DNA from: Haliotis rufescens
Lineage: Eukaryota
NCBI RefSeq assembly: GCF_023055435.1
Contig: NW_025964223.1
Coordinates: 39,928,001 to 39,992,000 of the forward strand
Direction of reading: 5' to 3'
DNA length: 64,000 bases
The position numbers and the translations under genes were made by a program. Shown piece by piece: positions 5,961 to 61,263 of this stretch (the first letter of the stretch is position 1; every line of letters starts with the position of its first letter). A model generated the notes under the pieces. It saw only the letters and a list, made by a program, of their open reading frames with translations. It searched no databases and had not been told where the DNA came from.

Positions 5961-8900
5961 TTAATATTTTCCGTTTGATGTGATGAGTTGCGCTGTTACA
6001 AGCGCCACTGAAGACACATATCCCTCCAGAGCCTGGTTGGAAAAGTAAACACGGACTGTGTTAGTGGTCGTTAACAAAGAGGTAGGGACATCAAACTCCC
6101 AAACTTCCCACCAGGTCTTCTTGTCAGACTTTTCGGAATCATACAATTTATAGAAAGAGTCAAGAGTCTGGAGATTGAAGGTAACAGCTGTTAAGTTGTT
6201 TGTTTCATTGACGGGAAGACTGGTAGAAACTCGCAATTTTGCATTTTGGAATTCACCATTTGGTAGAGATATGGTTGTTTCGGGAATGTTATTCTTGATC
6301 GGTATAACCATATCAGCTCCGTAGTATGTGGTTTCATTGAGAGTGATTTTTGGCAGTTGGTCTGAAGGGGTCTTGAATGTAAAGCGACACGTTGCCTCGG
6401 GAGGAAGTTCAACCATTCCCTGAGTATTCCGAATGTCGAAGGGTTCGTTGAATGTGATGATTGGATTCCAGTTGTCCTTGATTGTGATGCAAGTAGCTTC
6501 TCCCGTGGTCGGTGTTATCCAGTCGTCTTGGAACGTTAGCTTGATGGTCTGGGACTTTTGAGAATAGCTATGAAGGAGAATGACGGTTTCATTATTGAAG
6601 GGACTGGACATTGCTAACGGTGACACTGTGCGTTCCTGCCCGTCACATTGGCTGGTGGTTCTGATGAAGGAGTACTCTGTCGTGAAATTGTACCAAAACT
6701 CAAAAGCGTCCACAATACGCGTTGGTTTCCCTTGACGATTAAAAAGTGACCAGTTGAGACTAGCATCTCCTGGGGATTGTTCATTGGATAGAAGAAACAC
6801 AACTCCTCTCTCAACGTATTCCCTAAGACTTAGTTGGGTGAATCTATGGGCATTTGCTTGGTATATTGTTGAAAAGTCCACTATACCAGATGGAGCATAT
6901 TTGTCAATTCCCTCCACGGGTCCACGGCCATATTCACTGATAACAAGAGGGATAATCTTTCCTTTCCTTTGATTGGCGTAGTTTTCAACAAGGTCGACAA
7001 ATGCTACCAGTCGCGCTTCATTCATACCAGTAAATCGGTGAGATTTCCCCGAAACAACAAGTGTGTTGTATGAATGAAAGGAAAACGTGTCTAAATAGTC
7101 TAAAGTGACATCCATGAAGCTTGCTACCTGTTTCCAGTACGAAAAATTGTTTATGTCTGACATCTCTGTATATCCATCGAGTGTAGGGCCAGATACTTTG
7201 ATGTTAAATCTGGCATGGAGTTTCTCAGCAACTGTCTTGTGGAAAATGGAGACAGTCGTGAAATTCATGATCTGCCATTGAGAATCTGGTTCATTGATGA
7301 CCTCGAAGTATGGTGGGATCTGACCTTGGGTGTAGTCGTAAACTCCTTGCATCATCAACAACATGAACTCTGAAGCAGCATCGATATTGTTGGGGAACTG
7401 GCCTTCATGTTGGGACTGATTCATCCATTTCGGCCAGAAAACACCTGAAGACACATAGAATATGAAAGTCACATTCATCTATTTGTTTTTTTAGAATTGC
7501 ATGACATGTCATTCTGGGCTTAATGTGGATTTTCAGAATAGGTCTGCAATACTACTTTATTTCACATGAGCTATGTTTAGAAGTAGTAAACCCGTTTTAC
7601 CTTTGAAATGTAACGCCAAGCTTTAAGGTGTGTATATGCCTGTCAACATTTTAAGGGTTGATCTTGAACATATTTATATAGTTTTTAATCTTTTTTTGTT
7701 GCCACCAAATATCAGAAGTTTGGTTTCAGATACATTGATATTAAGGGGGGCACGGGTGGCCCAATTCGCTGTGCAGTGTTGTGTCACTTATGCATGCAAG
7801 AAACCTATGATTGTGGGTTCGCCTCTTTATGTATCTAGGTTTGTCAGCACCGTACCCGTGCTGATTGGTTTCACTTAGTGGTAAACGTCCGAGACCTTCA
7901 TCATTTAGGGGTTTCCTCCAACATTAAACTGACACGCCCTGATATAACTGGCATACCGTTCAACGCGGCGTTAAACCAAACTCACCCACTCACTTATTGA
8001 TACCCATAACTATAACAATTGAAATAAATCTAGCATTAGCTGCAGTTCTTTGGCTTTTGTTGATACAAGAACAGTTTCAATCGCATATAACAATACAAAT
8101 AAGTAAAAACACATGCAATGCAATCAAGCAATAAAGTACTTTAAGCTGAACACTTTGCAATTCGAAGTGCTCCTCCTCCTTCAGGAACATGGAAAACAGA
8201 AGTGTACGTAGATTTTGTCTAATGCCCTCTTTGTCTGGAAAAACTGTTTGAAAGCTGTTGAAATTAACACATGACATTTTATGTTTTGATATATATTAAT
8301 ATAACGTTGAAACGTTTTTCAGACAGTATTTATTTCAATAGTTTTAAGTCCTATTCGCCAAACCGAGTTAAATATATTTGTTAAGCCGATAAATACACTT
8401 TCATTTTGGGGAAACTTTTAATTCAAGCTGTCTCCAGAGAAAATGTGAAGAGAAACACGTTTGCAATTTGTACTGATATGATATTGTTTGTTTTGATAAA
8501 TGCTGTACGTTGTGCGCTAAAATAGACATGAAAAGTTTCGAAATGCACCTTAGCAGTGTGATTCGCCTATAATTTCCGGGCCCTTAGAATTTCCTTTATT
8601 TTTATAAATAGGTTTGAAAAAAGCGTGTGAATAGTGTGACATATACATCAACATCAACTGTTGAAAGTATAGATTATTTAATAGCATACCAATTCCAGCT
8701 GCTTTGCTACTTTAGAGTACACTTGCAAAATGTACTATAATTTCCGCTATACATGTAGTATCATATATACATGTAGATATTGTAAATCCATACTCACTCA
8801 CTACATTCTACCATGACGAGGTGAACGCTGTAAACACGATACTCATTTGGAATGATATTATTATAATGAAAATGCCAGCTATCTTAGAAAATTCCGACAA

Positions 8901-11900
8901 GGCGTCACAGGTAGTGAAGGAAATAACAAATTATATTCAAGTTCAAGATTAACTACTTGTATTATTGACTGATTTAAACAATGTTTACAAATACACAGCT
9001 TGTTATAAAAGAAGTGATCAAATAACAATTCATTGATACATAGTTAAGTTCATCGCAACCTGTTGCATATGTTCCACTGCTTGGACTTAAATCATTTCTT
9101 GGAAATCAGCATGACATCTCCCACCGTATGAGTGACATGTTGTAGAAGTAGTGCCACAAAATGCTGAATTAGTTTCTTTCTAAACAAGCCTTATTAATTA
9201 ACATTTTAGTTATTTTTATGTTGTACATATGAACCATTTGGTTTGCAATTACTTTCAAAAAGTAATACATATTCAGAATGACTATCTCGTCACCTTGAAC
9301 CTGGTTGAATTGACTTGGGTGCAACAGTAGCTGTCCATTGTGACTGTGCTATTTACAAATTACGTCTAGAAGATAATCCCGCTTTGTAATTATGTTCAAC
9401 AATAACCTGGCGATTTACTTTAGGAAATGAGCCTGCTGGCACATCATTGCCGACGGAACCACCCTGAAATATACTGAACAACAAAAGTTCCTGTGACATT
9501 GAACAAGATTTAATGCAAAGTTATTTTTTTTACCAAATCTGAAACAATTTCGGTTTGCAACAGATACAAAAACTCCTGTAAGTGTTCAAATAGTTTAATT
9601 TACCATACTGACTACTGATTTCATAAAAAATATGAACATGCCAAAATGTCAATTTACAAATCAATAGCGTGTGTATCCACCTCTGGTTTGCGATGCAAGC
9701 AACACATCTTCGTCTCATGGAATGGACCAGGCGTCGCACAAAGTCCTGTGGGATATCTGTCTATATCTGCTGGAGCATGTTTCGAAGCTCCTGGAGTGTC
9801 TGTGGAACACGCGGTTGACGTCGAAGGCGCCGATCCATCTCATCCCACATGTTCTCGATTGGTGAGAGATCAGGGGAGCGAGCCGGCCAGGGGATGATAT
9901 TCACGTTGTTTTGTTGAAGAGAATCCTGAACAAGTCGAGCAATACGAGGCCGGGCGTTGTCATGTTGAAAAGTAATGCCTGTGCCATGACGACGCAAAAA
10001 CGGTAGAACAACAGGGTCGATGATCTCGTCGCGGTAGCGCTGTCCATTGAGATTTCCCTCTACCACTATCAAAAAGGTCCTGTTTTGCTATAATCTCAAC
10101 CAATACCATAACGATGCCGTCCCGAACGATCTTCTTCCATGACACAATGATTGACGTAACGTTCACCTCGACGTTGGTACACTCGAATCCGCTGTCTGCA
10201 CCACTATAGACGTGCTTAACGACGTCTGGCGGGTCTTCTGGCGATAATCCCTGCACATCTGAGGCGACGACGTACGGTTTGTGAAGATATTCGTCAAAGG
10301 CCAGGGATGCTTCTTGCAGTCACTGTTGCTGGCTGGAATCGATTACGTAGGTGTGTTGTTCGAATCCAGTTGTCTTGTCGATTATTGGTTACGCGTGGCC
10401 TGCCACTCCGAGGATGGTCTCTGACTGCATTCGTCTGTTGCTAACGTTCCCATAAACACCAAATGGTGTTTCTGTGGACGTTAAATCTTGCAACATCACG
10501 TTGACTCGCTCCTGCTTCAAGCATACCAATGGCTCGCAGACGCTCATTTTCGGACAGGCGTGGCATTTTGTAATGTTGAATAATTGCGTAATTGTGTTGT
10601 TTTTCTGAGTGGTTGTTGTCAGCAAGATGCTAAACAATGCCTATGGAATCCCGTTAACGCACATGTTTTTATACCCATTCTTGGGTAGTGAAATCCATGG
10701 GGCTAGCATAAAAGTCAACTTTTGCATGGAATGCATGCTTTTCTGTAGCAGTTGCGTATTTGTGACTTGATTCCATATATGTACTACAATAGTGAAAGCC
10801 AAACTTTACTTGTAAAATATTGGTGTCACAGGAACTTTTGTTGTTGAGTATACGTCTGAATACCGCCGTTTTTTAGCTGAAGACCAGCCGGGTTTTGCGC
10901 AACATGTTAAACTACTATTGTTTGTGACACAGTGGTTAGTGTATCTTTTACTTAAGTGTATGTGTTCCGAAATAGATTTCATCATGTTTGATAAGTTATG
11001 CTTGGTATTTGTACCAGTAAGTGACAAAAACATCTGATAATCTTCCGATATCAAACGGATACAGTTCGAATGGGTTATCGGCAATCATTGTTACATGCAT
11101 CGATATGTAGGCTATCGATAGATTGATGTATTCACACACATATGTTTTGTGAAAAGCCAGCATAATTAAGAGATATCCAAAAGAGTTATAAGTGCATCTC
11201 ATCCCAAGGCTACACTATAATCGTGTTTTAATCATAGGCACCTTCTTCCCTTGATATCCACAAACACTACAGGTCTTACAGATTATTTTCTATCTCTAAT
11301 GGCTGAACCATTGAAACAATGTTTCTAAAGCAAACTCTTTTGTGAGCCTGATCATGACGCTCACTTTTGACAGGTGTGACTTTTGACTTTTGTTCTCAGC
11401 AGTGTTGCAGCTGTGTGGAGCCGTCCTGTAAATAATCAACCCTAGGCCAAACAATCCAGAGATTGATCCGCACCAGGTAACCGAGCCTGACCACTAGATC
11501 CATTTGGTCGCTTCTAACACATCAACAAGCTTAGCTTGCCTGGGACTTATTCTGATCCCACGTTCCCACATGTTGTCAGTGGATATTGAACTCATATGAT
11601 TTAGTGACTAACATGCAAATATGAATACCTTCATACGCTTGGCGATTTCAGTTACATTACTTATAAATGAGGGATTGGTTTCTGTACAATCTTACCTTTC
11701 GCCACCATGATCATTTCATTCTTATAACCACTGTTAATATTGGCAAGGTAGTCTGAGAACAGTTCTTGTTGCTTGGTGACGTTCTTAAGGTAGCTGGGAT
11801 CAGGGTAGCCGCTACGGTTTGGGTCCTCTGGCCACTATATAATGAATAAGTACAACATATGGCTCATATGACCCATCAAGAATTAATTGATCTAAGTAAG

Positions 11901-12595
11901 CGAAAAAAGACAACGATAGTTCCAAAGTAGTCTTGCCACTATAAAATCAAGAATAGCGTTATGGCCTTCTACAACCTTACAATTCTAAATTACGTTTCAG
12001 TGGAACGCGTCTCAGTATTGTGTGTGAACAGATTTGTAAAACATGGGCTTCAACCACATAAATTCGGAGCTGTACACAAATAAAAATATGAATAAAATGA
12101 ATATGTCGAATCCTAACCTGGAGATGGACACATGCCTATTGAGACCAGCCTTAATTTGTGAGCCTATGTTGATCCAAGTGAGTGAGGTTTCTATTCATAA
12201 ATTTCTGGTAGAATGGCCTCTAGAAACAATATTTTTTACATCAATTTCAGTATGAACGAATTCAATATTCAGAATATATTTGGAAAACAATATGTTCTTG
12301 TATAAATTTACATAAGAGAACGAAGTAGATTACAGCACGAGGAAGAAAGTCTCACATCTTGGAACAGACGATCATTTAGATCTCTGTTCATCCAGCGCCC
12401 ACTGTCAGTCCGAATGCTCCGACAACTTGGTATCAGGTATTCCTGTTCCAGACCATTGTGCTTGCTCCATCTGTCACGCTCATAGCGAACATTACCCCCC
12501 TTTGCTAGCCACTGAGGATAGATAGTCACAGTCGTGTTACTGTATACTCTAGCTATTGACAGGCTCAAAATGAAAGAGATGAGTGTGCATTTCAT
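5961..12595 (-). CDS. Secreted GH86-like beta-porphyranase/beta-agarase, copy 1 (intact, 620 aa). Exons 12356-12595, 11696-11834, 5961-7444
   Basis: GT-AG sites (GAT|GTGAGA; TAG|TGG; AAAG|GTAAG; CAG|GT). Exons 240+139+1484 nt splice in frame. Signal peptide MKCTLISFILSLSIARVYS; motifs WPEDPNRSGYPD, FEVINEPD, FSFHSYN, ISEYG and C-terminal GYVSSVALV. Family assignment is from recalled motif similarity, not a database search. Confidence 0.88.
7746..7994 (+). mobile_element. tRNA-derived SINE, family A (intron 2 of copy 1)
   Basis: GGGGCACGGGTGGCCCA head, conserved body and ACTCACCCACTCAC tail. Confidence 0.8.
9472..10850 (-). mobile_element. Full-length but defective Tc1/mariner (DD34E-type) DNA transposon in intron 2 of copy 1
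   Basis: TIRs of about 27 bp (TACTGAACAACAAAAGTTCCTGTGACA / TGTCACAGGAACTTTTGTTGTTGAGTA) flanked by TA at 9470-9471 and 10851-10852. Transposase from ATG at 10566 (MPRLSENERLRAIGML...) with a stop and frameshifts; motifs FQHDNARP and WPARSPDLSPIEN. Confidence 0.93.
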
Positions 12596-12639
12596 TGTCG
12601 ATGCTTTCTCCCCAAAAGAATATGTGTTCTTCTATAAAG

Positions 12640-15090: not shown

Positions 15091-15928
15091 GTATGTAGCT
15101 GAATAAATAACATTTATCAATACGATTGACCTTTCGTCCCTCTGGAACATGTATCGATTCGTGTCCTCTGCGGTACCTCCTATGAATATGAAACAATGAG
15201 CCATTCTTTAGATCTATTTTTATTTGTGTGTCTTTGACATACCATCGGCATAATCGTTTGATCCGACTCCCAGACTTCCCACCTGGTCTTCAGATTTTTC
15301 GGAATCTTACAGCTTTTCGAAAGAGTCAATAATGTGGAGATTATAGCAACAGCTGTTAAATTTGTTTCAATGACGGGAAGACTGGTTCAAAAAGGCATGT
15401 TTTGCATTATCGATTTCGCGATCGCCTTCTAGTGGAGATATAGTTGTTTTTGGGAAGCTATTCTTGATCGGTATAACCATGTCTACTCCGTAGTATGTGG
15501 ATTTCATTGAGAGCGATTTTTGGTAGTTGGTCTGAAGGGGTCTTAAATGTAAAGCGACACGTTGCCTCGGGAGGAAATTTCAACCATTCCTTGAGTAAGA
15601 TGGTGACGGTGACGCGGTTCGTTCTTGTCCGTCATATTGGCTAGTGGTTCTCACGAGGGAATTCTCTGACGTAAAATTGAACTAAAACTCACAGACGTCG
15701 ACAACATGCGTGGGGGAGTGAAACGTGATGACCAGTTTAAACTATCATGTCCTAGATATGGTTCATTGGCTTAAAGAAAGACGACGGTTCTGTCGATGTA
15801 TTCTCCTCTAAGTCCAACCTGGTGAACCCGTGGGCATTTGACTGGTATATTGTTGAAAGGTCATTTGTCCCAGATGGACCAGTTGAGCTGATTCCTGTCA
15901 CTCCCCCACGGCCACATACATTGATAAA

Positions 15929-16105
15929 GGGGCGGTCTGGTAGCCTTGTGGTTAAAGCGTTCGCTCGTCACGCCGAAGACCCAGGTTCGCATCCCGACAT
16001 GGGTACAAGGGATGAAGCCTATTTCCGGTGTCCCCCGCCGTAATATTGCTGAAATATTGCTAAAAGCGGCGTAAAACCATACTCACTCACTCACTCATCC
16101 ACTCA
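15929..16105 (+). mobile_element. tRNA-derived SINE, family B, inserted in exon 3 of copy 2
   Basis: GGGGCGGTCTGGTAGCCTTGTGGTTAAAGCG...GGTTCGCATCCC head, (ACTC)n tail and flanking direct repeat ACATTGATAAA. Confidence 0.88.
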
Positions 16106-17586
16106 CATTGATAAAAAGTGGGATAATTTCCCCTTCTGTCTATGAATGGAAGGAAAGCGTGTCAAAGTAGTCAAGAGTAACATCCATGAAGCTTGCTACC
16201 GCTTTCCAGAACGAAAATTCCCTTGCATCGAAAAAAGTTCCGTTAGGGTGAGTCCAGATACTTTTATGTTAAATCTTGCATGGAGTTTCTCAGCAACGGT
16301 CTTGTGAAAGATGGAGACAGTCGTGATGTTCATGATCGGCCATTGAGCATCTGGTTCATTGATGACCTCGATGTAACGCGGGATCTGACCCGGAAACCCG
16401 GAACCTCCTTGCACCATCAACAACATAAATTCTGGGACTGGTTCACCCATCTTGGCAAATTATGAGCTGAAACCAGCAAATTTAAAAAACTCGATTAGAG
16501 TTTGGAGAATTTAGAGTCCGACAAGGATGAAAATGCCGTTGACTGACGTAAATCAACTTTCACTCACTGTTGTCAGGAGACACAGGAGAAATTCAATTAA
16601 GGAAAAATAACCAGGTCATATCTATTTGTTATTCAAGTGCTTTTTATCTTTTGCACTTAAAATGTGCCGATGTAGATCTCAATAATAATATATCAGGCAT
16701 TGGTACCTGCATGTACAGTGTGGCAATACCAGTTCCAACCTCATTCTGAACATTTGAACTACGTTGTACCACGAATGGTCCAATGATACACCTACTAATG
16801 TCAACTTGTGACTTAACAGATTACGTCATACTCCTGATTCATTCGCTAAGAGCTGTGTCAGGTGGAACTTGTGGGAATTTGAACTTGTTGCTTCCCTTTT
16901 GCTTGAAATATGTTTTATTTGTTTTATGCCGACGATAATGAATATGAATACCACTAAAACCTTAGTGATGGAAAATGTATTACATGTTAATGACATTTTG
17001 TTTTCTGGTGACTCTCATTATCAGGATCATTTCATTCTTATAACCACTGATAATGTTATCAAGGTAACTGGAGAACAGTTCCCGTTGCTGGGTGACGTTC
17101 GTCAAGTAGCATGGATCAGGGTAGCCACTATGGTTTCGGTCCTCTGGCCACTGCAATCAATATCGGTTATTGAATTGTTTTTCCACTTCAAATAGTAGTT
17201 TTGGTGAAAGTAGCCGCTAGGGTCTGGATCCTCTGGCAACGATATAATGAATATGTAGAAAAAGTGTTATTTCTTATAATCCTTTAGGACTAACTGTTGT
17301 TCACTGAAAACGTATCACAGCAGAATAATGGAACTAATTATGTGTAAAACGAAAACAATATTTCGAAATTCATCCTTGTTACAAGAATGTCAATTCACCT
17401 TCTCTTCATCAACCATGATAACATATGTTTGCTTGGGCGATCAAGACACATCTAGCAAGTATTATATATGCCAACTAAATAGCGAATATGGTTGTGATTA
17501 ACACAGTGTCTTATCCTTAACAAGAGATCGACATCAGTACGTTGATCTCCTTCAGCTAGACTGCTATATATATCACGAGAAAATAA

Positions 17587-17754
17587 GAGTGAGTGAGTGA
17601 ATATGGTTTGACACCGCTTTTAGCAATATTCCAGCAATATCACGGCGGGGGACGCCAGAAATGGGCTTCACACATTGTACCCATGTGGAGAATCGAACCC
17701 AGGTCTTCGACGTGACGAGCGAACGCTTAAACGCTAGGCTACCGGACCGCCCCT
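17587..17754 (-). mobile_element. tRNA-derived SINE, family B
   Basis: Reverse-complement homologue of 15929-16105, with TSD GAGAAAATA at 17577-17585 and 17755-17763. Confidence 0.88.
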
Positions 17755-18120
17755 GAGAAAATAGAAGGCTACAATATGCAATGAATAATTGCATTATATA
17801 GAGGCCATAATACAACATATATTTTTGGTAAAGTCGGTTATTTTTCCAATATTACTACAACTTGCAATATGAATGAACTAACTCTTCAGCTGAAACACAG
17901 TTGGAATACAAGATATGCTTGCTTTAGTTTGATGAGAATCTCACATCTTGGAAGAGACGATCATCATTATCTTCGTGTTAATTTGCAAAAGGTAACGATA
18001 AAAGTAAGTGAAATATCAAAATATGGAAAAACAGATTCCATGTCCCTTATGAGCCACCGTAGGACTAACTGGTGTTCACTGAAAATAAACGCATTTATTG
18101 TGTGCTTCTATGATGAAGAG

Positions 18121-18390
18121 GGGGCACGGGTGACCTAGTCGTCTAAGGCACCGCGATTCGCTGTGTAGAGTTGCGTCCGTTTGGCACGCCAGAAACCTAT
18201 GATTGTGGGTTCGAATCCCGGTTCGCCCCGATTATGTTTCTAGGTTTGTCAGCACCATACCCGTGCTCGTGGGTTTCACCGAAATGGTAAACGTCGGAGA
18301 CTTCGGGCTTTCCTCCCACATTAAACTGACACGCCGTGATATAACTGCAATAATGTTAAAAAGCGGCGTTAAAACCCAACTCACTCACTC
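18121..18390 (+). mobile_element. tRNA-derived SINE, family A
   Basis: A-box-like GTGACCTAGTCGTCTAAGG, B box GGTTCGAATCCC and (ACTC)n tail. Confidence 0.88.
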
Positions 18391-19312
18391 TTTGATCAAG
18401 AGCAATCAAGCAAGAACAATGTATTATCTATGCCAATTGAACAGCGAATATAGCCTTATTTCATTCACTTTTCAGAGATAGACAACAGTAGGTTGATCTG
18501 AGCAACACAGTCAGGTAGCAGTCTTACTATATTTATCACAATGTAAACCCGGATGAGTTGAACTGGGTTTGTCGAATTCCAAGTTTTCACGACTCAATTT
18601 AATGTGCGAAGAGTTAAACCTTACTCTGTTTCCTAAAACTTTCACAACAAGTATTATGAGTAAGTCTCACATCTTTGAAGAGAAAATCGTCGTAATCTCT
18701 GTGTATCCAGCGTCCAATGTCTTGGAATGAGAGATTCGTGTTCTAGACCATTGTGCTTGTTTCACCTGTCGGCTTCATGGCGAAGATTACCTCCTTTTGC
18801 TAGCCACTCAGGATAGATCACAGTCGTGTTACTGAAAACTGTGCCTATTGAAAGGCTTAGTGTGAAAAGGACCAGTGTCCATTTCATTGTCGCTGATTTC
18901 TGCTTAGAAAGAATATTAGTGTTCTGCTTGCGAGTGACAGTGTTTATAGCATGAAATAGTGTATTGCTTATCACTGACCTTGATACATTTTCCAAGTTCT
19001 AAAAACGTACAAACATGATAAGGAATGACCGATTACACTACAGAGGTGAAGGGACAGCGCAGCCTAGATGTCAGTGAATGTACTAGTCATTGTGAATTGC
19101 AAAAACGTTAGGATATGACTTATTATTGAAAAAAATACTCCCAGAAAATAATTAATTAATTAATATTAATTATGCTGCAAACTATTGAAAAGAACAATCA
19201 AAAATACATTGTTGTAAGATGTTTAAAAGTTTAAAAAAAATCTGGTTTAGCAACCATAGCGGTAGATAATATCCAGTCTCCATATAAAATCCCAGCTCCC
19301 CACCAGAATATC

Positions 19313-21254: not shown

Positions 21255-24200
21255 TCAGGACTTCACATCAAATAGGACACGTTTGGCTGTGACGAGGGCA
21301 AGTGAAGAAACATATCCCGCCGTCATGTTGTTAGAGAAGTGGACCTGTACCTGGTTAGCCCCGGTGACAAATAGGGAGGTAGGGACATCAAACTCCCAAA
21401 CTTCCCAATAGGTTGGACTGTCAAACTTGTCAGAATCATACAGCTTATAGAAAGAGTCAAGGCGGTGGAGATTGAAGGTAATATATGAAACACTGTTTGT
21501 TACATTGATCGGCCAACTGGTTGAAACTCTCAGTCTTGCACTGTGATATTGGCCATTTGGTAGAGATATAACTGTCTTGATATTGCCCTTGATTGGTATT
21601 AGTGAATCAGCTCCGTAATATGTGGTTTCGTTGAGAGTGACCGAAGGCAGTGTGTTTGAAGGGGTCTTGAATGTGAAATGACATGTTGCCTCAGGGGGAA
21701 GTACAACCATTCCTTGGGTCATGTCGAAGGGTTCTTTGAAGGTGATGACTGGGTCCCAATTGTCCTTGATGGTGATGCAGGTAGCTTCTCCAGTGGTTGG
21801 TTTGATCCAGCCGTCTTGAAAAACTAATTTAACATTCTGTGACTTCTGAGAATAGCTGTGTAAGAGAATGACGGTTTCATTATACAAGGAACTGGACATT
21901 GCTAATGGCGAAACCGTTCGTTCCTCTCCATCATACTGACTCGTGGTTCTGATGAAGGCGTAGTCTGATGTGAAATTGTACCAAAACTTGTAGACATCGA
22001 CGATATGTGTAGCGTTTCCTTGAAGAGTGAAAAGTGACCAGTTGAGACTGTCATGTCCTGGGTATTTTTCATTAGCTAAGAGAAAGACAACTGTCCTGTC
22101 AATGTATTCTCTGAGACCAAGTTGAGTGAATCTGTGGGCATTGGAGTGGTATATTGTTGCAAAGTCGACAATGCCCGATGGAGCTATTGAGCTAATTCCT
22201 GTCACTCCACCGCGACCATATTCACTGATAATAATGGGGGTAATTTTTCCTGTCTTCAGATAGGCATAGTTTTCAACAAGGTCGACAAATGCTACCAGTC
22301 GCGCTTCATTCATACCAGCAAATCGGTGAGATTTTCCTGAAACAATAAGTGAGTTGTACGAATGAAAGGAAAACACATCTAAATATTCTAAAGTTGTGTC
22401 CATGAACTGTGCCACTTGGCTCCAAAACGAAAAGTCGTTTCTGTCCGCCGCTCCAGAATACCCTGTGAGTGTAGGGCCAGCCACGTTGATATTAAATCTG
22501 GCATGTAGTTTCTCCGCTACTAATTTATGAAAGATGGAGACAGTCGTAAAGTTCATTATCTTCCATTGAGCATCCGGTTCATTGATGGTCTCGAAGTATG
22601 GAGGAATCTGACCTTTGGTAAAATCATAGATTCCTTGCACCATCAACAACATGAATTCTGCAGCTGCATCTACGTTGTTGGGGAACTGACCTTCATGTTG
22701 GGACTGGTTCATCCAATTCGGCCAATTATGAGCTGAAACAAACAAATTTAAAAAATCGATTGTTTAGAGACCAACAGGACATTGATGGAAATAAGGGTTG
22801 ACCATGGCACAATCAACTTTCATTCTATCTTGTCAGTGGACATAGGGGAAATCGAATTAGCGGAAAATAAACAGTTTATTGAATTTAAAATATGTTTGCA
22901 CCTGTATATCGCATATGAAATCATATCAGTAATTGGGCACCACTATTTCACAAATGGGTACTTGCATGTACAGAGGGGCAAAAGCAGTTTCATCCTCATG
23001 CTGGCCCAACCCACATACATGTCCATATTTCAACTTATGACTCAACAAATTACGCCATCATCCTCTTTCATTACTTATTGCTGGGTAAAACGTTGCAGGC
23101 GTCTTTGTTATTTGTAGGAATTTAGATTTTGTTGCTTCTGTCTTGCTTGGAATCCTTTGCATTTTTTCGTGAGGACGAATGTGATTATAAATACCTCCAA
23201 ATCCTTAGTGTTTTAAATTATATTACATATTACTGACATTTTATTTTCTGGCAACACTTACCTCTCATCATCATGACCATTTCATTCTTATAACCACTGT
23301 TGATGTTAGTGAGGTACCGGGAGAACACTTCCTTTTGCTTGGAAACGTTCTTCAAGTAGTTAGGGTCAGGGTAGCCGCTGTGGTTTGGATCCTCTGGCCA
23401 CTGTATAAAAAATAAGTAAAATTTTCTTATCTACAATAAACTTTCATGACTTTACTGAAAATAAATGTAAAATGGAATTTTGTGTGTGTAAAACCAAAAC
23501 ATTATTTCAAAAGGCAACCAGTTGTTACATTTCCAAAACGTATCTCCATGCACCTTCTCCACATCAACCTTGATAGCACTTATCATGGGCTTGTATGATC
23601 AAGAGCAATCAAGCAAGTACAATGTACTAACAAAACCATTTGAACAGCGAATATGGCCTTATTCCATACAGTTTTGAATCCTAAACAATAGATAGACATA
23701 ATAACGATGATCCTAGTGTCTCATTCAGCTTGTCAACTACAGTCGAACACCATTGTCTCGAACTTGGATGTGTTGAATTCCCGTATGTGTCGACTTCGCA
23801 GTCCGGAACCACTGCACTTTCACTATATTTATCCCTATGTTAACCCGGACGAGTTGAACTGGATTTGTCGAATTCCCAGTTGTCTCGGACTCAATTTAAA
23901 GTGCCTAGAGTTTAAAGAAGCTAAAACCTTACCCTGTTTCCTAAAACAGGTATCATATTGTTCCTATGCTAGGATAAAATCATAATTATGCAAAACAGTA
24001 CTGCATCGTTTCTAATGGTAGTTTTATGTTGGTACTCTTTTCAGTATTACTACAACAAGTTTTTTTAAATAAATCTCACATCTTTGAAGAGAGAATCGTC
24101 ATAATCTTCGTGTATCCAGCGCCCGCTGTCAGTCCGAATGCTCCGACAACTTGGAATGAGGGATTCGTGTTCTAGACCATTGTGCTTGTTCCACCTGTCG

Positions 24201-24319
24201 GCTTCATAGCGAAGATTACCCCCCTTTGCTAGCCAATGAGGATAGATCGTCACAGTCGTGTCACTGTGTACAATGTCTACTGAGAGGGTCAATGTGAAAA
24301 GGACCAGCGTCCGTTTCAT
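21255..24319 (-). CDS. Secreted GH86-like enzyme, copy 3 (intact, 618 aa). Exons 24080-24319, 23262-23400, 21255-22732
   Basis: Canonical GT-AG sites and exons 240+139+1478 nt in frame. Signal peptide, FETINEPD and ISEYG present; AATAAA on the minus strand at 21188-21193. Confidence 0.88.
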
Positions 24320-45745: not shown

Positions 45746-45955
45746 AAAAGCGACTATGCTTGTAGTAAGAGGTGACTAACGGGATCGGGTGGTCAGGCTC
45801 GCTGACCTGGTTGATGCATGTCTCCGTCATCCCATTTGCGTGGTTCGATGCTAATGATGTCAATCACTGGATTGTCTGGTCCAGACTCGATTTACAGACC
45901 GCCGACATACAGCTGGAATATTGGTGAGTGTAGCGTTACACAACAAACCAACAAG
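45745..45955 (+). mobile_element. SINE-like family D, 5'-truncated
   Basis: GCGACTATGCTTGTAGTAAGAGGTGACTAACGGGATCGGGTGGTCAGGCTCGCTGAC...CAACAAACCAAC. Confidence 0.8.
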
Positions 45956-47669: not shown

Positions 47670-50600
47670 TTATAATTCTGACGCATTATCAGATGGGACA
47701 AGCTTGGCTGTGACAAGAGCAACTGAAGAAACATATCCTGCTGTCATGTCGTTAGAGAAGTGGAACTGTACAAAGTTAGCCCCCGTGACAAAGAGGGAAG
47801 TAGGGACAGCAAACTCCCAAACTTCCCAATAGGTGGTGCTGTTAAACTTGTCGGAATCATACAGCTTATAAAAAGAGTCAAGGCGGTGGAGGTTGAAGGT
47901 AACATACGATACATAGTTTGTTTCATTGATCGACCAACTGGTTGAAACTCTTAATCTTGCACTGTGGTATTGATCATTTGGTAGATTTATGTCAGTCAAA
48001 GCGATCTTATCTTTGATTGGTATAAGAATATCAGCGCCGTAGTATGTGGTTTCGTTGAGAGTGACAGTAGGTAATTGGTCTGAGGGGGTCTTGAATGTCA
48101 AGTGACATGTTGCCTCAGGGGGAAGTTCAAACATTCCTTGTGTCTTCTGGATGTTAAAGGGCTCGTTGAAGGTCATGATCGGATACCATTCGTCCTTGAT
48201 GGTGATGCAAGTAGCTTCTCCCATGGCTGGTTTCATCCATTCGTCCTTAAAGTCAAGCTTGACTGTTTGCAACTTCTGAGAATAGCTATGTAAGAGAATG
48301 ACGGTTTCGTTATGCAGGGAACTGGACATTGCTAAGGGAGACACGGTTCGTTCCTGTCCATCATATTGGCTGGTTGTTCTGATAAAGGAATAGTCTGACG
48401 AGAACTTGTACCAAAACTCAAAGACGTCGACAATACGTGTAGCATTTCCTTGAAGAGTGAAAAGTGACCAGTTGAGACTATCATGTCCTGGATATTTTTC
48501 ATTGGCTGAAAGAAACACCACTGCTCTGTCAATGTATTCCCTTAGACTGAGTTGAGTGAATCTGTGGGCATTGCAATGGTATATTGTTGAGAAGTCTACT
48601 ATACCTGATGGAGCAAATTTGTCAATTCCTAACACAATATCGCGGCCATATTCACTGATAACAAGGGGGACGGTCTTTCCTGTTTTCTGAGAGGCATAAC
48701 TTTCAACCAGGTCGACAAATGCTACCAGACGTGCTTCATTCATTCCAGTGAGATTGTGAGATTTGCCTGTCACGATGAGTGAATTGTACGAATGAAAAGA
48801 AAACACGTCCAAATAGTCTGATGTGACGTCCATGAAATATGCCACTTGTTTCCAGTACGAAAAGTCGTTTCTATCTGCTGACCCTGTTTCGCCGTCAAGT
48901 GTAGGCCCAGACACTTTGATGTTAAATCTGGCATGGAGTTTCTCCGCAACTAATTTGTGGAAGATGGCAACAGTCGTAAAATTCCAGATGTCAGTCTTAG
49001 CGTCTGGTTCATTTATGGGCTCGAAGTAGGGTGGAATCTCTCCTTTGGTATAGTCATATACTCCTTGCACCATCAGCACTATGAACTCTGCAGCAGCATC
49101 GATGTTGTTGGGGAATTGACCCTCATGTTCGGACTGGTTTATCCAACTTGGCCAGCTATGAGCTTAAAGCAACAATATGATGGAACATGAAACTGACATA
49201 CAAATGAAATTAAAAACATATATGTGCTTTCGATGAGAATATGCTGATTGGTGTTTGATGTGTTGTCTTATTATGAAACATAATAAGTTATCTTTGTTCT
49301 CAAGGAAAATCAATCTATTTAACATGTATTGTGAAATAGATGAACACTAATTTGCTTTTAGGTACTCGCCTCTAAATGTACTTCTCCACTTTTGACAGGG
49401 ATTTTTTTTATTTTTCCGTGGTATACAAAACTGAATCTCATTCTCGTCAAGGGTATTTTAAAATAAAATGACATAACTGATCAAAAGTTGAATAATATAC
49501 ATCTCAAATGTCTGTGCACATCTCCCATAATAATTTGTACATACAAATACAACAATGATTATGGAGTGTGGTTCTTTGTTTTCACTCGCGATGGCCGAAC
49601 ATGCACTCACCTGTCTATTGAACGCTAGTGACGGTTCCGAATTAGTCTCTTACATATTTTGTTTAAACTCTTTTTGTGTTAGAACATTTGTGACAGAGAT
49701 GCAAATCTGAATACACCTAAGATCTTCCGTCTTAAATATATTTATTTAACTTTCACATGATAGTGTTTCTTTGAGAACATTCTCACCTTTGGCCACCATG
49801 ATCATTTCATTCTTATAACCACTGTTGACGTTAGTGAGGTACTGGGAGAACAGTTCCTGCTGTTTGGTGACATTCTCCAAGTAGTTGGGGTCAGGGTAGC
49901 CACTACGGTTTGTGTCCTCTGGCCACTGTATAATTGATAAATGAAATTAACGGTTAATTTGGATCCATTAATGTCGTCAGACATGGAACTTTATGGATAA
50001 CAATTTCTTAATTTTTTGTAGCAACGCTCCGTAGGCTACTTCTTGCCCCTTCATCAGTGAAAATGTAATTTCGAAGATATGAAGAAACATTATGGAAAAC
50101 AACCTTGGTATTCCTTTTCTCCAAACACTATTTTAGAGGTTATTGCTGTTTAAATCCGCACTCAGCAGTTCTTCAGCTATATATGGCGCCAGCATGTAAA
50201 TGATCGAGTATAGACGAGACAATGTAGTCCTTGATATTATGAGGTACGATCCACGCTGCAATGGTACATTGACACGCTTTCCACCAAGTCACTGAGCCTG
50301 ATCACCCGATCCCTCTTAAGCTTGCGATCAGCTTAGGTTATTGCAGACTTACGCTAACCCAGAACCTGCACGTGTAAGCTCATCAAGTAATAAGTGTTGA
50401 TCCTAATGACATAAAGACATAAAGCACTGTCTAATATATGAAGAACAAGGACAAAAAAATCGAATTGGAAAGAAAATCTCACATCTTGGAAGAGACGATC
50501 ATTTAGATCTCTGTTCATCCAGCGCCCACTGTCAGTCCGAATGCTCCGACAATTTGCAATAAGGGACTCCTTTTCCAGGCCGTTATGCTTGTTCCATCTG

Positions 50601-50722
50601 TCACTCTCATAGCGAACTCTACCTCCCTGTGCCAGCCACTGAGGGTAGATCGTCACCGTCGTGTCACTGCTCACACCAACTATTATCAGGCTCAAAGTGA
50701 AATAGACAAGTCTCAATGCCAT
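47670..50722 (-). CDS. Secreted GH86-like enzyme, copy 8 (intact, 623 aa). Exons 50483-50722, 49787-49925, 47670-49162
   Basis: Exons 240+139+1493 nt in frame; the exon 3 acceptor is AAG. Signal peptide MALRLVYFTLSLIIVGVSS; motifs FEPINEPD and ISEYG. Confidence 0.87.
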
Positions 50723-51725: not shown

Positions 51726-51728
51726 CAC

Positions 51729-58232: not shown

Positions 58233-61200
58233 TTATCCTTCTGATGCATTTTTAGATGGGACAAGCTTGGCTGTGACAAGCGCAACTGAAGAAACATATC
58301 CTGCTGTCATGCTGTTAGAGAAGTGGAACTGTACCAGGTTAGCCCCCGCGACAAAGAGGGATGTAGGGACAGCAAACTCCCAAACTTCCCAATAGGTGGT
58401 GCTGTTAAACTTGTCGGAATCATACAGCTTATAGAACGAGTCAAGGGGGTTGAGGTTAAAGGTAACATACGATACATTGTTTGTTTCATTGATCGGCCAA
58501 CTGGTTGAAACTCTCAATCTTGCACTGTGGTATTGGTCATTTGGTAGATTTATGTCAGTCAAAGCGATTTTGTCTTTGATTGGTATAAGAATATCAGCGC
58601 CGTAGTATGTGGTTTCGTTGAGAGTGACAGTAGGTAATTGGTCTGAGGGGGTCGTGAATGTCAAGTGACATGTTGCCTCAGGGGGAAGTTCAAACATTCC
58701 TTGTGACTTCTGGATGTTAAAGGGCTCGTTGAAGGTCATGATCGGATACCATTCGTCCTTGATGGTGATGCAAGTAGCTTCTCCCTTGGCTGGTTTCATC
58801 CATTCGTCCTTAAAGTCAAGCTTGACTGTTTGCAACTTCTGAGAATAGCTATGTAAGAGAATGACGGTTTCGTTATGCAGGGAACTGGACATTGCTAAGG
58901 GAGACACGGTTCGTTCCTGTCCATCATATTGGCTGTATGTTCTGATAAAAGAATAGTCTGACGAGAATTTGTACCAAAAATCAAAGACGTCGACAATACG
59001 TGTAGCGTTTCCTTGAAGAGTAAAAAGTGACCAGTTGAGACTATCATGTCCTGGATATTTTTCATTGTCTAACAGAAACACCACTGTTCTGTCAATGTAT
59101 TCCCTTAGACTGAGTTGGGTAAATCTGTGGGCATTGGAATGGTATATTGTTGAGAAGTCTACTATACCTGATGGAGCAAATTTGTCAATTCCTAACACAA
59201 TATCGCGGCCATATTCACTGATAACAAGGGGGACAATCTTCCCTTTCTTCTGAGAAGCATAACTTTCAACCAGGTCGACAAATGCTACCAGACGTGCTTC
59301 ATTCATTCCAGTGAGATTGTGAGATTTGCCTGCCACGATGAGTGAATTGTACGAATGAAAAGAAAATGCATCTAAATAGTCTAATGTGACGTCCATGAAA
59401 TATGCCACTTGTTTCCAGTATGAAAAGTCGTTTCTATCTGCTGACCCTGTTTCGCCGTCAAGTGTAGGCCCAGACACTTTGATGTTAAATCTGGCATGGA
59501 GTTTCTCCGCAACTAATTTGTGGAAGATGGCAACAGTCGTAAAATTCCAGATGTCAGTCTTAGCGTCTGGTTCATTTATGGGCTCGAAGTAGGGTGGGAT
59601 CTCTCCTTTAGTATAGTCATATACTCCTTGCATCATCAACACTATGAACTCTGCAGCGGCATCGATGTTGTTGGGGAATTGCCCCTCATGTTCTGACTGG
59701 TTTATCCAACTTGGCCAGTTATGAGCTTAAAGCAACAATATGATGGAACATGAAACTGACATACAAATGAAATTAAAAACATCTATGTGCTTTCGATAAG
59801 AATATGTTCATTTGTGTTTGATGTGTTGTCTTTTTAAGAAACATAATAAGTGACCAATCTGATTATCATGTATGGTGAAATAGATGAACACTAAATTGCT
59901 TTTAGGCATTTGCCTCCAAATATACTTCTCCACCTTTGACAATGGCATTTGTTTGTTTTTCATGATATGCAAAACTGTTTCTCACAATGCGTCAAGATTA
60001 GTTTAAAATAAAATGACATATCTGATCAAAACTTGAAATATATACATTAAATGCCTCTGCAAATCTCCCATAATATTTTTTTTACAAACAAATGCATTAA
60101 TGATTATGGAGTGTTGGTCTTTCAATTCACTCGAGTTGTATGATGGGGAAGGACGCGCTCACCTGCCCATTGAACGCGACTGAAGGTTTCTGAATGAGTA
60201 GCCTATATTATGCTCAAACTCTTCTTGTGGTAAAATGTTTGCGACAGAAATACAAATCTGAATACACCTAAGATCTTCCGTTTGAAATATACTTATTAAG
60301 CTATTAAATGACAGTGTTTCTTTCAGAATTGTCTTACCTCTCGCCATCAAGATCATTTCATTCTTATAACCACTGTTAATGTTAGCAAGGTAGTTGGAGA
60401 AGAGTTCCTGCTGTTTGGTGACATTCTTCAAGTAGTTGGAGTCAGGGTAGCCGCTACGGTTTGTGTCTTCTGGCCACTGTATAATTGATAAATGAAAATA
60501 ACGGTTTGTTATGATCTATTTATGTCAACGCAAACGTTATGGATAACAACTTCTTAATTGTTTGTAACAAAGCTCCAAGGTTACGTCTTGTCCCATCATC
60601 ATCAAAGACATGAAGAAACGTTATGGATAACAACTTCGGTATTTTTTCTCCAAACAATATTTTAGAGGTTATAGTTGTTCAACACAGCACTCAACAGTAC
60701 TTCAGCTATATATGACGCCGGCATTTAAATGATCGAGTCCAGACTAGACAATGTAGTTATTGATACTATGAGCAACGATCCACGCCAGAGGTGTACATTG
60801 ACACGCCATCCACCAAGACAGCGAGCCTGATCAACCGATCCATTAAGTCGCTTCTAAGCTTACGATCCCCTTAGGTTGTTACGGACTAATGCTGACCCAG
60901 AATCCCCACGTATAGGCTCTTCAAGTAATAATTGTTAATCCTAATAGAAAAAGGCATAAACCACTGTCATATATATTAAGTACAAGGAAAAAACAAAGAA
61001 TCGCATTAGAAAGAAAATCTCACATCTTGGAAGAGACGATCACTATCATCTGGGTGTATCCAGCGCCCACTGTCAGTCCGAATGCTCCGACAGTTTGCGA
61101 TAAGGGACTCCTTTTCCAGGCCGTTATGCTTGTTCCACCTGTCACTCTCATAGCGAACTCTACCGCCCTGTGCCAGCCACTGAGGGTGGATCGTCACCGT

Positions 61201-61263
61201 CGTGTCACTGTACACACCGCCTAATATCAGACTCAAAGTGAAATAGACAAGTCTCCATGTCAT
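58233..61263 (-). CDS. Secreted GH86-like enzyme, copy 9 (intact, 623 aa). Exons 61024-61263, 60338-60476, 58233-59725
   Basis: Exons 240+139+1493 nt in frame. Sister duplicate of copy 8 including introns and flanks; signal peptide MTWRLVYFTLSLILGGVYS. Confidence 0.87.

What the first reader, a model, noticed from the sequence alone, without database searches (positions are those of the whole stretch)
5961..61263. Animal-genome tandem array of bacterial-type GH86 beta-porphyranase/agarase genes: a candidate endogenous red-seaweed digestion system acquired by horizontal transfer
Seen: nine co-oriented paralogues, six of them intact, with GT-AG introns and signal peptides, embedded among metazoan SINEs and LINEs, so bacterial contamination is not plausible. 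Established: NEP and (S/T)EYG are the clan GH-A acid/base and nucleophile contexts, and characterised GH86 enzymes (for example BpGH86A of Bacteroides plebeius) are bacterial agarases/porphyranases. The run EDP.R.GY.D / FE..NEP / W....FMD...D.FS.H.Y / D.VE.Y....G...P..ISEYG / YY....PI / A.LR / E..VP..L...N.V.V.F...G.VSS..L follows the GH86 catalytic domain plus C-terminal beta-sandwich as I recall it. Inference: an algae-grazing mollusc encodes its own agar/porphyran hydrolases, an activity usually credited to gut bacteria. I am not aware of a characterised animal-encoded GH86, but I cannot confirm novelty without a search.
Basis: partly seen in the sequence, partly recalled or inferred. Interest (0 to 1): 0.95.

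Follow-up and report, generated by a model that had tools for sequence, protein, structure and literature searches.

The report
Abalone's own GH86 seaweed-galactan hydrolase genes
The red abalone chromosome carries a tandem array of spliced, transcribed, secreted enzymes of glycoside hydrolase family 86, a family otherwise almost wholly bacterial that cuts red-seaweed agar and porphyran, so the animal itself, not only its gut microbes, probably digests these sugars.

Summary
Nine co-oriented minus-strand copies lie at 5961-61263. Six are intact (A, C, D, F, H, I). Three are decayed (B, E, G). All full copies share one 3-exon layout with GT-AG introns and a signal peptide. The window is Haliotis rufescens, on a 63-Mb chromosome. 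RefSeq already names these genes 'beta-porphyranase A-like', but I found no paper on an animal GH86.

Family membership is firm. Only GH86 structures match by sequence (E 1.6e-31). The AF2 model (pLDDT 91.5) superposes on BuGH86, BpGH86A and Aga86A_Wa (Z 35, rmsd 2.8 A) from the signal-peptide cut to the C-terminus. Both catalytic glutamates are conserved.

Copy F is transcribed and spliced exactly as predicted. Paralogue dN/dS is 0.19-0.28.

The array belongs to an expansion of about 60 or more genes in this genome. The family also occurs in mussels, a pearl oyster and a chiton. Molluscan sequences form one clade, so any transfer was ancient and single, not abalone-specific.

Bacterial origin rests on distribution: hundreds of bacterial relatives, against molluscs plus one unnamed eukaryote. 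The unrooted tree does not show it. Substrate (agar/porphyran-type galactans) is inferred. LINEs were not confirmed. First-stage notes of this scan flag sister arrays elsewhere in this genome.

The parts
5961..12595 (-). Copy A, intact GH86 gene (RefSeq protein P0005, 620 aa). Exon 1 is 12595-12356, exon 2 is 11834-11696, exon 3 is 7444-5961.
   Evidence: P0005 maps at 99-100% identity. Exon phases, GT/AG sites and the open frame were checked. Pfam BPA_C scores 32.8 bits against a cut-off of 26.2.
15280..18896 (-). Copy B, a decayed pseudogene. All three exons are recognisable, but exon 3 is broken into six or more out-of-frame pieces with deletions, and the exon 1 donor is lost.
   Evidence: Fragmented tblastn HSPs at 36-76% identity. 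The boundary printout shows no GT after exon 1.
21255..24319 (-). Copy C, intact. Exon 1 is 24319-24080, exon 2 is 23400-23262, exon 3 is 22732-21255.
   Evidence: It is a young duplicate of D (dS 0.04).
26845..30332 (-). Copy D, intact (RefSeq protein P0009, 620 aa). Exon 1 is 30332-30093, exon 2 is 29753-29615, exon 3 is 28328-26845.
   Evidence: P0009 maps at 99.6-100% identity. Exons checked.
32239..35776 (-). Copy E, a pseudogene. The splice sites are kept, but there is no ATG, an in-frame stop in exon 1, and a premature stop at 32968-32970 in exon 3.
   Evidence: One search reports '1 TAA' inside the match at C445:39960242-39961717.
39963..43435 (-). Copy F, intact and shown to be transcribed and spliced (RefSeq protein P0001, 635 aa). 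Exon 1 is 43435-43160, exon 2 is 42451-42313, exon 3 is 41455-39963.
   Evidence: P0001 maps at 99.8-100% identity. Contigs X1 record 4 and X2 record 20 join 43160 to 42451 and 42313 to 41455 with 0-1 mismatches. A 1405-nt contig covers 39980-41384 with 0 mismatches. Intron depth is nil outside a repeat.
45410..45763 (-). Fragment G, a relic of exon 3 (about residues 201-329) with a stop codon.
   Evidence: 52% identity. One search reports C445:39973410-39973760 with 1 TAA.
47670..50722 (-). Copy H, intact. Exon 1 is 50722-50483, exon 2 is 49925-49787, exon 3 is 49162-47670.
   Evidence: It is a young duplicate of I (dS 0.11).
58233..61263 (-). Copy I, intact. Exon 1 is 61263-61024, exon 2 is 60476-60338, exon 3 is 59725-58233.

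Best explanation
The window holds part of a large tandem array of animal-encoded genes for secreted glycoside hydrolases of family GH86 in the red abalone, Haliotis rufescens.

Each gene makes a protein of about 620 aa with four parts:
- a eukaryotic signal peptide;
- a (beta/alpha)8 barrel carrying the clan GH-A catalytic pair, the acid/base Glu in NEP and the nucleophile Glu in SEYG;
- two beta-sandwich domains, the last being the GH86-specific BPA_C domain.

The enzymes most likely act in the gut lumen or digestive gland as retaining endo-beta-1,4-galactanases. Their probable substrates are agar-type red-algal galactans (agarose, porphyran or funoran-like polymers), which they would cut to neo-series oligosaccharides. 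That would give the animal its own first step in red-seaweed digestion.

The family most likely entered an early molluscan (or older) lineage once, most probably from a marine bacterium. It then gained a signal peptide and two 5' introns, was lost in many molluscs, and expanded to about 60 or more genes in abalone by repeated tandem duplication under purifying selection.

Shown here: animal chromosomal location, gene structure, splicing and transcription of copy F, GH86 sequence and fold membership, conserved catalytic residues, selective constraint, the genome-wide expansion, and monophyly of the molluscan genes.

Inferred: secretion site, substrate, and the donor and direction of the transfer.
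For: Host and location. The closest proteins are RefSeq Haliotis proteins on a 63.3-Mb contig, and P0001 is 100% identical to the window. The window is G000:C445:39928001-39992000. G+C is uniform.

Gene structure. Six copies have identical exon sizes and GT-AG introns. The same layout is seen in the two other deep abalone clades.

Transcription. Two runs from different samples hold contigs that join exons 1-2-3 of copy F at the predicted bases, with no intron coverage. A DNA-like run does cover the introns.

Family.
- phmmer of one exon 3 hits only GH86 chains in the PDB.
- The mollusc profile hits only 8h97, 5ta1, 5ta0 and 4aw7, with E 1.6e-31 to 4e-21 over positions 79-605.
- The AF2 model has pLDDT 91.5 and pTM 0.91.
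- The top 7 Foldseek hits are all GH86 (E 1e-39 to 1e-35, TM 0.73-0.81). The next is GH30 at 4e-21 and TM 0.4.
- VIA-align gives Z 34.7-35.1 and rmsd 2.8-3.0 A over 527-565 residues, spanning model residues 31-632. The next families score Z below 20 and cover only residues 32-499.

Catalysis. E190 (NEP) is invariant, and N189 and E310 (SEYG) are at least 90% conserved in 60 mollusc, bacterial and eukaryote sequences. Both motifs are present in all six intact copies.

Constraint. dN/dS is 0.19-0.28 for all 15 pairs, and dS reaches 0.87.

Expansion. There are 83 exon-3 matches in the genome, and about 60 are full-length without stops.

Distribution.
- The family occurs in four Haliotis species, Mytilus, Pinctada and the chiton Liolophura.
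- An exhaustive profile search of 1.84 billion representatives gives 497 hits. The mollusc-type hits score at least 237 bits, then there is a gap to 163 bits or less.
- The named relatives below the gap are bacterial: Gayadomonas, Rubellicoccus and IMG 'agarase' entries. Atlas clusters are Planctomycetota and Bacteroidota.
- Molluscs form one clade, with support 100 in both trees.

Literature. Agarase is listed among abalone viscera enzyme activities without a gene (PMC11241667, PMC6181387). Agarases are otherwise described as microbial (PMC5874223, PMC5870069).
Against: No enzymology was done. Identity to characterised GH86 enzymes is only 16-18%, so specificity could differ.

Filter-feeding mussels and pearl oysters keep the family, which does not fit a purely macroalgal role.

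The Pfam GH86 domain models reach threshold in only one of four copies tested. BPA_C passes in A only, and Porphyrn_cat_1 is sub-threshold at 13.7 bits against 27.

The tree is unrooted. The nearest relative of the mollusc clade is a eukaryotic transcript, P0110 (SH-aLRT 87). A bacterial donor is therefore not demonstrated phylogenetically.

Only copy F was tested for transcription. The tissue is unknown because the runs are coded, and they are labelled 'RNA?' by guess.
Confidence: 0.7

Rival explanations
1. Real, expressed GH86-fold hydrolases whose natural substrate is not agar or porphyran. Candidates are other sulfated or methylated galactans of micro- or macroalgae, biofilm or diatom exopolymers, or an endogenous glycan. 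On this reading the 'red-seaweed digestion' label would be wrong, while everything else holds.
For: Identity to characterised agarases and porphyranases is only 16-18%. The family is kept in filter-feeding Mytilus and Pinctada. The mollusc clade sits on a long stem of 0.66-0.77 changes per site. The abalone expansion has three deep clades at 35-50% identity, which suggests several specificities. From my own knowledge, adult red abalone eats mostly kelp.
Against: Every characterised GH86 activity known to me (beta-agarase, beta-porphyranase, funoran hydrolase) is on agaran-type galactans. The whole three-domain architecture superposes at rmsd 2.8 A. Agarase activity is reported in abalone viscera (PMC11241667, PMC6181387). 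From my own knowledge, chitons and abalone graze red and coralline algae.
Confidence: 0.25
2. There was no bacterium-to-animal transfer. GH86 would be an old eukaryotic or metazoan gene inherited vertically and lost almost everywhere, or it reached molluscs from another eukaryote.
For: The nearest relative of the mollusc clade is a eukaryote's transcript (P0110). It has a signal peptide and 17 N-glycosylation sequons, and it hits Mytilus (108 bits) better than any bacterial protein found by the word-indexed search. The family spans three molluscan classes with conserved introns in abalone. The tree is unrooted.
Against: No other animal appears among hits from 5.8 billion and 1.84 billion protein sets. 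Atlas neighbours other than the mollusc cluster are bacterial. Bacterial GH86 span at least four phyla with far greater diversity. Both introns sit in the first 380 nt and the remaining 1.5 kb is intronless, which is typical of acquired genes. The P0110 placement involves two long branches and is not strongly supported.
Confidence: 0.12
3. Bacterial contamination or an assembly artefact, or dead gene relics without function.
For: None found. Three of the nine copies are indeed pseudogenes.
Against: The contig is 63 Mb and shows the same array structure over 180 kb. Spliceosomal introns are removed in transcripts. G+C is host-like. Orthologues exist in four Haliotis species. dN/dS is 0.2.
Confidence: 0.01

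Closest known systems
BuGH86 of Bacteroides uniformis (PDB 5ta1, 5ta0, 5ta5), an endo-beta-agarase crystallised with neoagarooctaose
   Same: The three-domain architecture is the same: a (beta/alpha)8 barrel plus two beta-sandwiches. It superposes at Z 35.1 and rmsd 2.8 A over 562 residues, from residue 31 to 631 of the abalone model. The NEP and SEY glutamates align.
   Different: Identity is 16-17%. The abalone genes are nuclear, with two introns, a eukaryotic signal peptide, 11-12 N-glycosylation sequons, no lipoprotein or PUL context, and dozens of paralogues.
BpGH86A of Bacteroides plebeius (PDB 4aw7), a beta-porphyranase
   Same: The family and fold are the same (Z 34.8, rmsd 2.8 A over 527 residues). 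The C-terminal BPA_C domain is recognised by Pfam in copy A. RefSeq names the abalone genes after it.
   Different: Identity is 17%. BpGH86A is itself a horizontally acquired gene in a gut bacterium, whereas here the recipient is the animal genome. The porphyran-specific sulfate pocket was not examined.
Aga86A_Wa (PDB 8h97), a GH86 beta-agarase
   Same: It is the best sequence match of the mollusc profile (E 1.6e-31, positions 79-605). The fold match is Z 34.7.
   Different: Identity is 18%. It is bacterial.
Endogenous or horizontally acquired polysaccharide-degrading enzymes of herbivorous molluscs. Examples are the GH45 cellulase AkEG21 of Aplysia (PMC4123733) and, from my own knowledge, abalone PL14 alginate lyase, GH9 cellulase, GH5 mannanase and GH16 laminarinase.
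   Same: All are animal-encoded, secreted digestive carbohydrate-active enzymes with patchy animal distribution. HGT has been discussed for some of them.
   Different: None of them targets red-algal agarans. No animal GH86 was found in the papers searched. The size of the expansion, about 60 genes, is unusual.

Membership tests
Glycoside hydrolase family 86 (CAZy GH86) | Significant sequence similarity to GH86 members, and to no other GH family | tested here: met
   In the PDB sequence search only GH86 chains pass. The single protein gives 2e-9 to 3e-7. The mollusc profile gives 1.6e-31 to 4e-21 over nearly full length. No GH5, GH30, GH39 or GH79 chain reaches E <= 0.001.
Glycoside hydrolase family 86 (CAZy GH86) | Three-domain fold: a (beta/alpha)8 barrel followed by two beta-sandwich domains | tested here: met
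   The AF2 model has pLDDT 91.5. The top 7 Foldseek hits are GH86. VIA-align gives Z 35 over residues 31-632, while other clan GH-A families score Z below 20 and stop at about residue 500.
Glycoside hydrolase family 86 (CAZy GH86) | Clan GH-A catalytic pair: the acid/base Glu after strand 4 (NEP) and the nucleophile Glu after strand 7 (SEY) | tested here: met
   E190 is invariant. N189 and E310 are at least 90% conserved across 60 sequences. The motifs are present in all six intact copies. The SEY motif aligns with that of BuGH86.
Glycoside hydrolase family 86 (CAZy GH86) | Pfam GH86 domain models (BPA_C PF18040, Porphyrn_cat_1 PF18206) above the gathering score | tested here: inconclusive
   BPA_C passes in copy A (32.8 bits against 26.2) but is not reported for D, F or I. 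Porphyrn_cat_1 scores 13.7 bits against 27 in copy I. PF18040 is precomputed for many family members. The structural match covers both domains.
Glycoside hydrolase family 86 (CAZy GH86) | Retaining hydrolysis of beta-1,4 linkages in agarose, porphyran or funoran | not testable with these tools
   This needs recombinant enzyme assays.
Horizontally acquired animal carbohydrate-active enzyme | Integrated in a host chromosome, with host-like composition and spliceosomal introns | tested here: met
   The contig is 63 Mb. G+C is 0.38-0.41 throughout. GT-AG introns are at conserved positions.
Horizontally acquired animal carbohydrate-active enzyme | Transcribed and correctly spliced | tested here: met
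   Spliced contigs of copy F are present in two runs. The other copies were not tested.
Horizontally acquired animal carbohydrate-active enzyme | Narrow distribution in animals against a wide distribution in the putative donor domain | tested here: met
   Among animals, the named hits are all molluscan. Three mollusc-type hits from unnamed samples (P0103, P0104, P0106) could not be traced to a host. Bacterial relatives come from Bacteroidota, Planctomycetota, Verrucomicrobiota and Gammaproteobacteria. One other unnamed eukaryote has a relative.
Horizontally acquired animal carbohydrate-active enzyme | Recipient clade nested inside donor diversity on a rooted, well-supported tree | tested here: inconclusive
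   Molluscs form one clade (support 100). The tree is unrooted. The sister is a eukaryote transcript (87), followed by a metagenomic 'agarase' (91). Long branches are involved.

The most novel reading that the evidence does not exclude
Abalone, and more widely some molluscs, make their own active agarases or porphyranases from a GH86 gene captured from marine bacteria more than half a billion years ago. This would be the first animal-encoded members of the family. The expansion to about 60 genes in abalone would represent a host-encoded, substrate-diversified toolkit for red-algal galactans, so red-seaweed digestion in these grazers would be largely a host function rather than a microbial one.
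Probability: 0.5. Interest if true: 0.8.

Novelty: new member of a known kind. Interest (0 to 1): 0.68.

Why it matters
Agarases and porphyranases are treated in the literature as microbial enzymes. The best-known GH86 story is their transfer from marine bacteria into human gut Bacteroides. Digestion of red seaweed by abalone is usually credited to the gut microbiota, or left unassigned.

A transcribed, selectively constrained, host-encoded GH86 family of about 60 genes makes the host-versus-microbiome question directly testable by expression, proteomics and enzymology. It adds an ancient, mollusc-wide case to the list of carbohydrate-active enzymes that animals acquired from microbes. It also offers eukaryote-adapted (glycosylated, secreted) agaran hydrolases for abalone aquaculture nutrition and for making seaweed oligosaccharides.

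Interest is limited for three reasons: the family itself is well known, the genes are already auto-annotated in RefSeq, and activity is unproven.

Tried and rejected
- The search for related loci with the mollusc alignment in genome contigs matched 119 pattern stretches, but none was confirmed. I therefore have no named bacterial loci for the tree.
The hosts of the unnamed mollusc-type proteins P0103, P0104 and P0106 could not be examined. Neither could the intron positions in Mytilus or the chiton.
- The last homologue search, with the eukaryote protein P0110, found only itself, Mytilus and two weak metagenomic hits. Its organism stays unknown.
- Pfam on eight long non-GH86 ORFs gave nothing, so no LINE is supported. 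ARAGORN and Rfam found no RNA gene in the window.
- N-glycosylation sequon density does not separate molluscs from bacteria overall (p = 0.48). Only the window's own clade is rich in sequons.
- Ten paper searches found no report of an animal GH86. The HGT compendium's tables are not held as text.
- I did not try to root the tree with another clan GH-A family, because those families are too distant (Z below 20).
Full-length analyses used the RefSeq proteins returned by the search tool (P0001, P0005, P0009), and exon checks were done exon by exon.
- One translate reference was off by two bases and was corrected.
- I met no human-like contigs. Read laying was given 4001 letters.

Full report
WHAT IS THERE

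The window is uniform in composition, with G+C 0.35-0.41. It has eight long minus-strand ORFs of 221-544 aa that are obvious paralogues.

A homologue search with one of them returned RefSeq proteins of Haliotis rufescens at 100% identity on a 63.3-Mb contig. It also returned orthologues and paralogues in H. asinina, H. cracherodii and H. rubra. Most are named 'beta-porphyranase A-like', 'beta-agarase-like' or 'funoran endo-beta-hydrolase-like'. The window is G000:C445:39928001-39992000 of a 1.33-Gb assembly.

GENE MODELS

tblastn of two RefSeq proteins finds nine co-oriented copies. I checked the exons one at a time, without joining them.

- Copies A, C, D, F, H and I each have an ATG and an exon 1 of 240 nt (276 nt in F, from an upstream ATG).
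- Each has an exon 2 of exactly 139 nt and an open exon 3 of 491-496 codons.
- Each has GT..AG at both introns.
- Exon 1 begins with a typical eukaryotic signal peptide: a hydrophobic core, then VYS/VFS followed by (N/D)TTVT.
- Copy E keeps its splice sites but has no ATG, a stop in exon 1 and a premature stop at 32968-32970.
- Copy B is shattered by frameshifts and deletions.
- G is a 350-nt relic with a stop.

An earlier first-stage note on the two 5' introns (s1-808159) agrees.

The same three-exon layout occurs in the two other deep abalone clades, which I fetched from other contigs. Both introns therefore predate the divergence of paralogues that are now only 35-50% identical.

I did not build my own spliced proteins. 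For full-length work I used P0001, P0005 and P0009, the RefSeq products of copies F, A and D as returned by the search tool.

TRANSCRIPTION

I laid contigs of four public runs on 39700-43700.

- Two runs from different samples of one study each hold a contig that joins 43160 to 42451 and 42313 to 41455, with 0-1 mismatches. These are the predicted exon 1/2 and 2/3 junctions of copy F.
- A 1405-nt contig covers exon 3 with 0 mismatches.
- These runs have no depth in the introns except over a very high-copy repeat.
- A large DNA-like run does cover the introns.

Copy F is therefore transcribed and spliced. The runs are coded and their 'RNA' label is a guess, so tissue and expression level are unknown. 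The other copies were not tested.

FAMILY

By sequence, only GH86 chains in the PDB match. A single exon 3 gives 2e-9 to 3e-7. A nine-sequence mollusc profile gives 1.6e-31 (8h97 Aga86A_Wa), 3e-29 (BuGH86) and 4e-21 (BpGH86A) over positions 79-605.

Pfam BPA_C passes its cut-off in copy A only. Porphyrn_cat_1 and GH5 'Cellulase' are sub-threshold.

An AlphaFold2 model of P0001, built on a 60-sequence alignment, has pLDDT 91.5 and pTM 0.91.

- The first seven Foldseek hits are all GH86 (E 1e-39 to 1e-35, TM 0.73-0.81). The next family, GH30, is at 4e-21 and TM 0.4.
- VIA-align gives Z 34.7-35.1 and rmsd 2.8-3.0 A over 527-565 residues, spanning model residues 31-632.
- That span runs from the residue after the signal peptide to the C-terminus. 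GH51, GH30 and GH39 reach only Z below 20 and stop near residue 500.

The whole mature protein, including the part encoded by exon 1, is therefore collinear with bacterial GH86. Only the signal peptide is different.

In the 60-sequence alignment the NEP glutamate (E190) is invariant. N189 and the SEYG glutamate (E310) are at least 90% conserved. All six intact copies carry both motifs.

CONSTRAINT AND EXPANSION

Nei-Gojobori estimates on exon 3 give dN/dS of 0.19-0.28 for all 15 pairs. dS is 0.63-0.87 for most pairs. Two pairs are young: C-D at 0.04 and H-I at 0.11.

A six-frame search of the whole assembly finds 83 exon-3 matches, about 60 of them full-length without stops.

- This array continues to about 40.11 Mb on C445, with roughly 22 copies.
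- A second array lies at 45.28-45.44 Mb, and there is a single copy at 5.9 Mb.
- A clade at 45-51% identity lies on C11, C190, C599 and C601. Some of these may be haplotigs, since several rows have identical scores.
- A clade at 35-39% identity lies on C90, C1, C285 and C13.

First-stage notes of this scan flag those other arrays. They are unchecked notes, and one search confirms only that copies lie there.

DISTRIBUTION AND ORIGIN

With the mollusc profile, the word-indexed search of 5.8 billion proteins found 98 proteins. They come from Haliotis, Mytilus galloprovincialis and M. californianus, Pinctada imbricata and the chiton Liolophura sinensis, plus one weak metagenomic hit.

The exhaustive profile search of 1.84 billion representatives found 497 hits.

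- Eleven mollusc-type hits score 237 bits or more. Then there is a gap to 163 bits or less.
- Look-ups show the top group is Haliotis and Mytilus plus three unnamed Logan/ENA proteins.
- Below the gap, the named hits are bacterial: Gayadomonas joobiniege, Rubellicoccus/Puniceicoccus, and IMG 'agarase' and 'beta porphyranase' entries.
- Atlas neighbours, apart from one Mollusca cluster, are Planctomycetota and Bacteroidota clusters.

One exception is P0110. It is a complete Trinity ORF from EukProt with a signal peptide and 17 N-x-S/T sequons, so it is genuinely eukaryote-like. Its organism is not given.

I built two trees on the GH86 region: FastTree on 137 rows, and IQ-TREE LG+C20 PMSF on 81 rows.

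- Both recover all 23 molluscan sequences as one clade (support 100) on a long stem of 0.66-0.77.
- P0110 is the sister (94 and 87), followed by the metagenomic 'agarase' P0127 (91).
- Inside the clade, the window's lineage plus the 45-51% clade is sister to a group of chiton, bivalves and the third abalone clade.

This pattern means one origin that predates the split of Polyplacophora, Bivalvia and Gastropoda. Paralogy is old, and many losses followed, because no oyster, limpet, sea hare or cephalopod protein appeared.

The trees are unrooted and long branches are involved. 'Nested within bacteria' is therefore not demonstrated. A bacterial donor is inferred from four points:

- the lopsided distribution;
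- the intron-poor structure, with two introns in the first 380 nt and 1.5 kb intronless;
- the full collinearity with bacterial enzymes;
- the absence of the family from other animals.

A eukaryote-to-mollusc route, or an older eukaryotic history, remains possible. I give it about 0.12.

FUNCTION

The shown elements are a secreted-type precursor, an intact GH-A catalytic machinery in a GH86 fold, transcription, and purifying selection.

The mechanism follows from the family: retaining, double-displacement hydrolysis of beta-1,4-galactosidic bonds. As far as I know from the family's literature and the PDB titles seen, all characterised GH86 enzymes are endo-acting on agarose, porphyran or funoran.

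Papers list agarase among the activities of abalone viscera without assigning a gene (PMC11241667, PMC6181387). They treat agarases as microbial (PMC5874223). They also discuss red-algal polysaccharide degradation in abalone in terms of the microbiota, with GH86 of Polaribacter as an example (PMC5870069).

My best reading is that these genes supply host-made agaran hydrolases to the gut. At 16-18% identity to the characterised enzymes, and with the family present in filter feeders, a different galactan or exopolymer substrate is a serious rival (about 0.25).

NOVELTY AND SCORE

The enzyme family and the phenomenon of microbe-derived digestive enzymes in animals are both known. RefSeq's pipeline has already named these genes by similarity.

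Ten full-text searches found no study of an animal GH86. The library lacks most subscription journals, so this is not proof.

I class the finding as a new member of a known kind. It has three notable features: it would be the first animal members of the family, it has an ancient molluscan origin, and it is expanded to about 60 genes. Interest is 0.68.

LIMITS

- The genome-contig scan returned nothing.
- The taxonomy of most bacterial hits is unknown.
- Only one gene was tested for transcription.
- LINEs were not confirmed.

Noticed in passing
window 13557-13819, 37814-37983, 41924-42186, 45738-45954, 56391-56651: An interspersed repeat of about 260 bp occurs in both orientations at 74-86% identity. 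One copy lies inside intron 2 of copy F. Its word depth in public runs is 1e4 to 1e6, so it is a very high-copy, SINE-sized element of the abalone genome. ARAGORN finds no tRNA-like part, and there is no Rfam hit.
   Followed up: partly
protein P0110 (EukProt transcript, not in the window): This is a complete 674-aa GH86-like protein from an unnamed eukaryote. It has a signal peptide and 17 N-glycosylation sequons, NEC in place of NEP, and SEHG at the nucleophile. It is the nearest relative of the mollusc clade (SH-aLRT 87). Molluscs are therefore not the only eukaryotes with the family.
   Followed up: partly
window copies C/D (21255-30332) and H/I (47670-61263): There are two very young duplicate pairs, with dS 0.04 and 0.11. 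The other pairs have dS 0.63-0.87. The array is therefore still growing by local duplication while shedding copies (B, E, G).
   Followed up: yes
G000:C445 39.93-40.11 Mb and 45.28-45.44 Mb; C601, C599, C190, C11; C90, C1, C285, C13: Genome-wide there are about 60 full-length stop-free exon-3 copies in three deep clades. Several C599 and C601 rows have identical scores and may be haplotig duplicates.
   Followed up: partly
window copies A, D, F (proteins P0005, P0009, P0001): The window's clade carries 11-12 N-x-S/T sequons per protein (1.8-1.95 per 100 aa). That is about three times the median of other molluscan GH86 (0.65) and of bacterial GH86 (0.73).
   Followed up: partly
window 43436-43449 and 43399-43435: A transcript contig reaches at least 14 nt upstream of the annotated ATG of copy F. 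F has an extra in-frame upstream ATG (12 codons) that the other copies lack. Which start is used is unknown.
   Followed up: no
window 1-5960: This is an AT-rich flank (G+C 0.35 in the first 4 kb) with no ORF of 90 aa or more on either strand. No neighbouring gene was identified on this side of the array.
   Followed up: no
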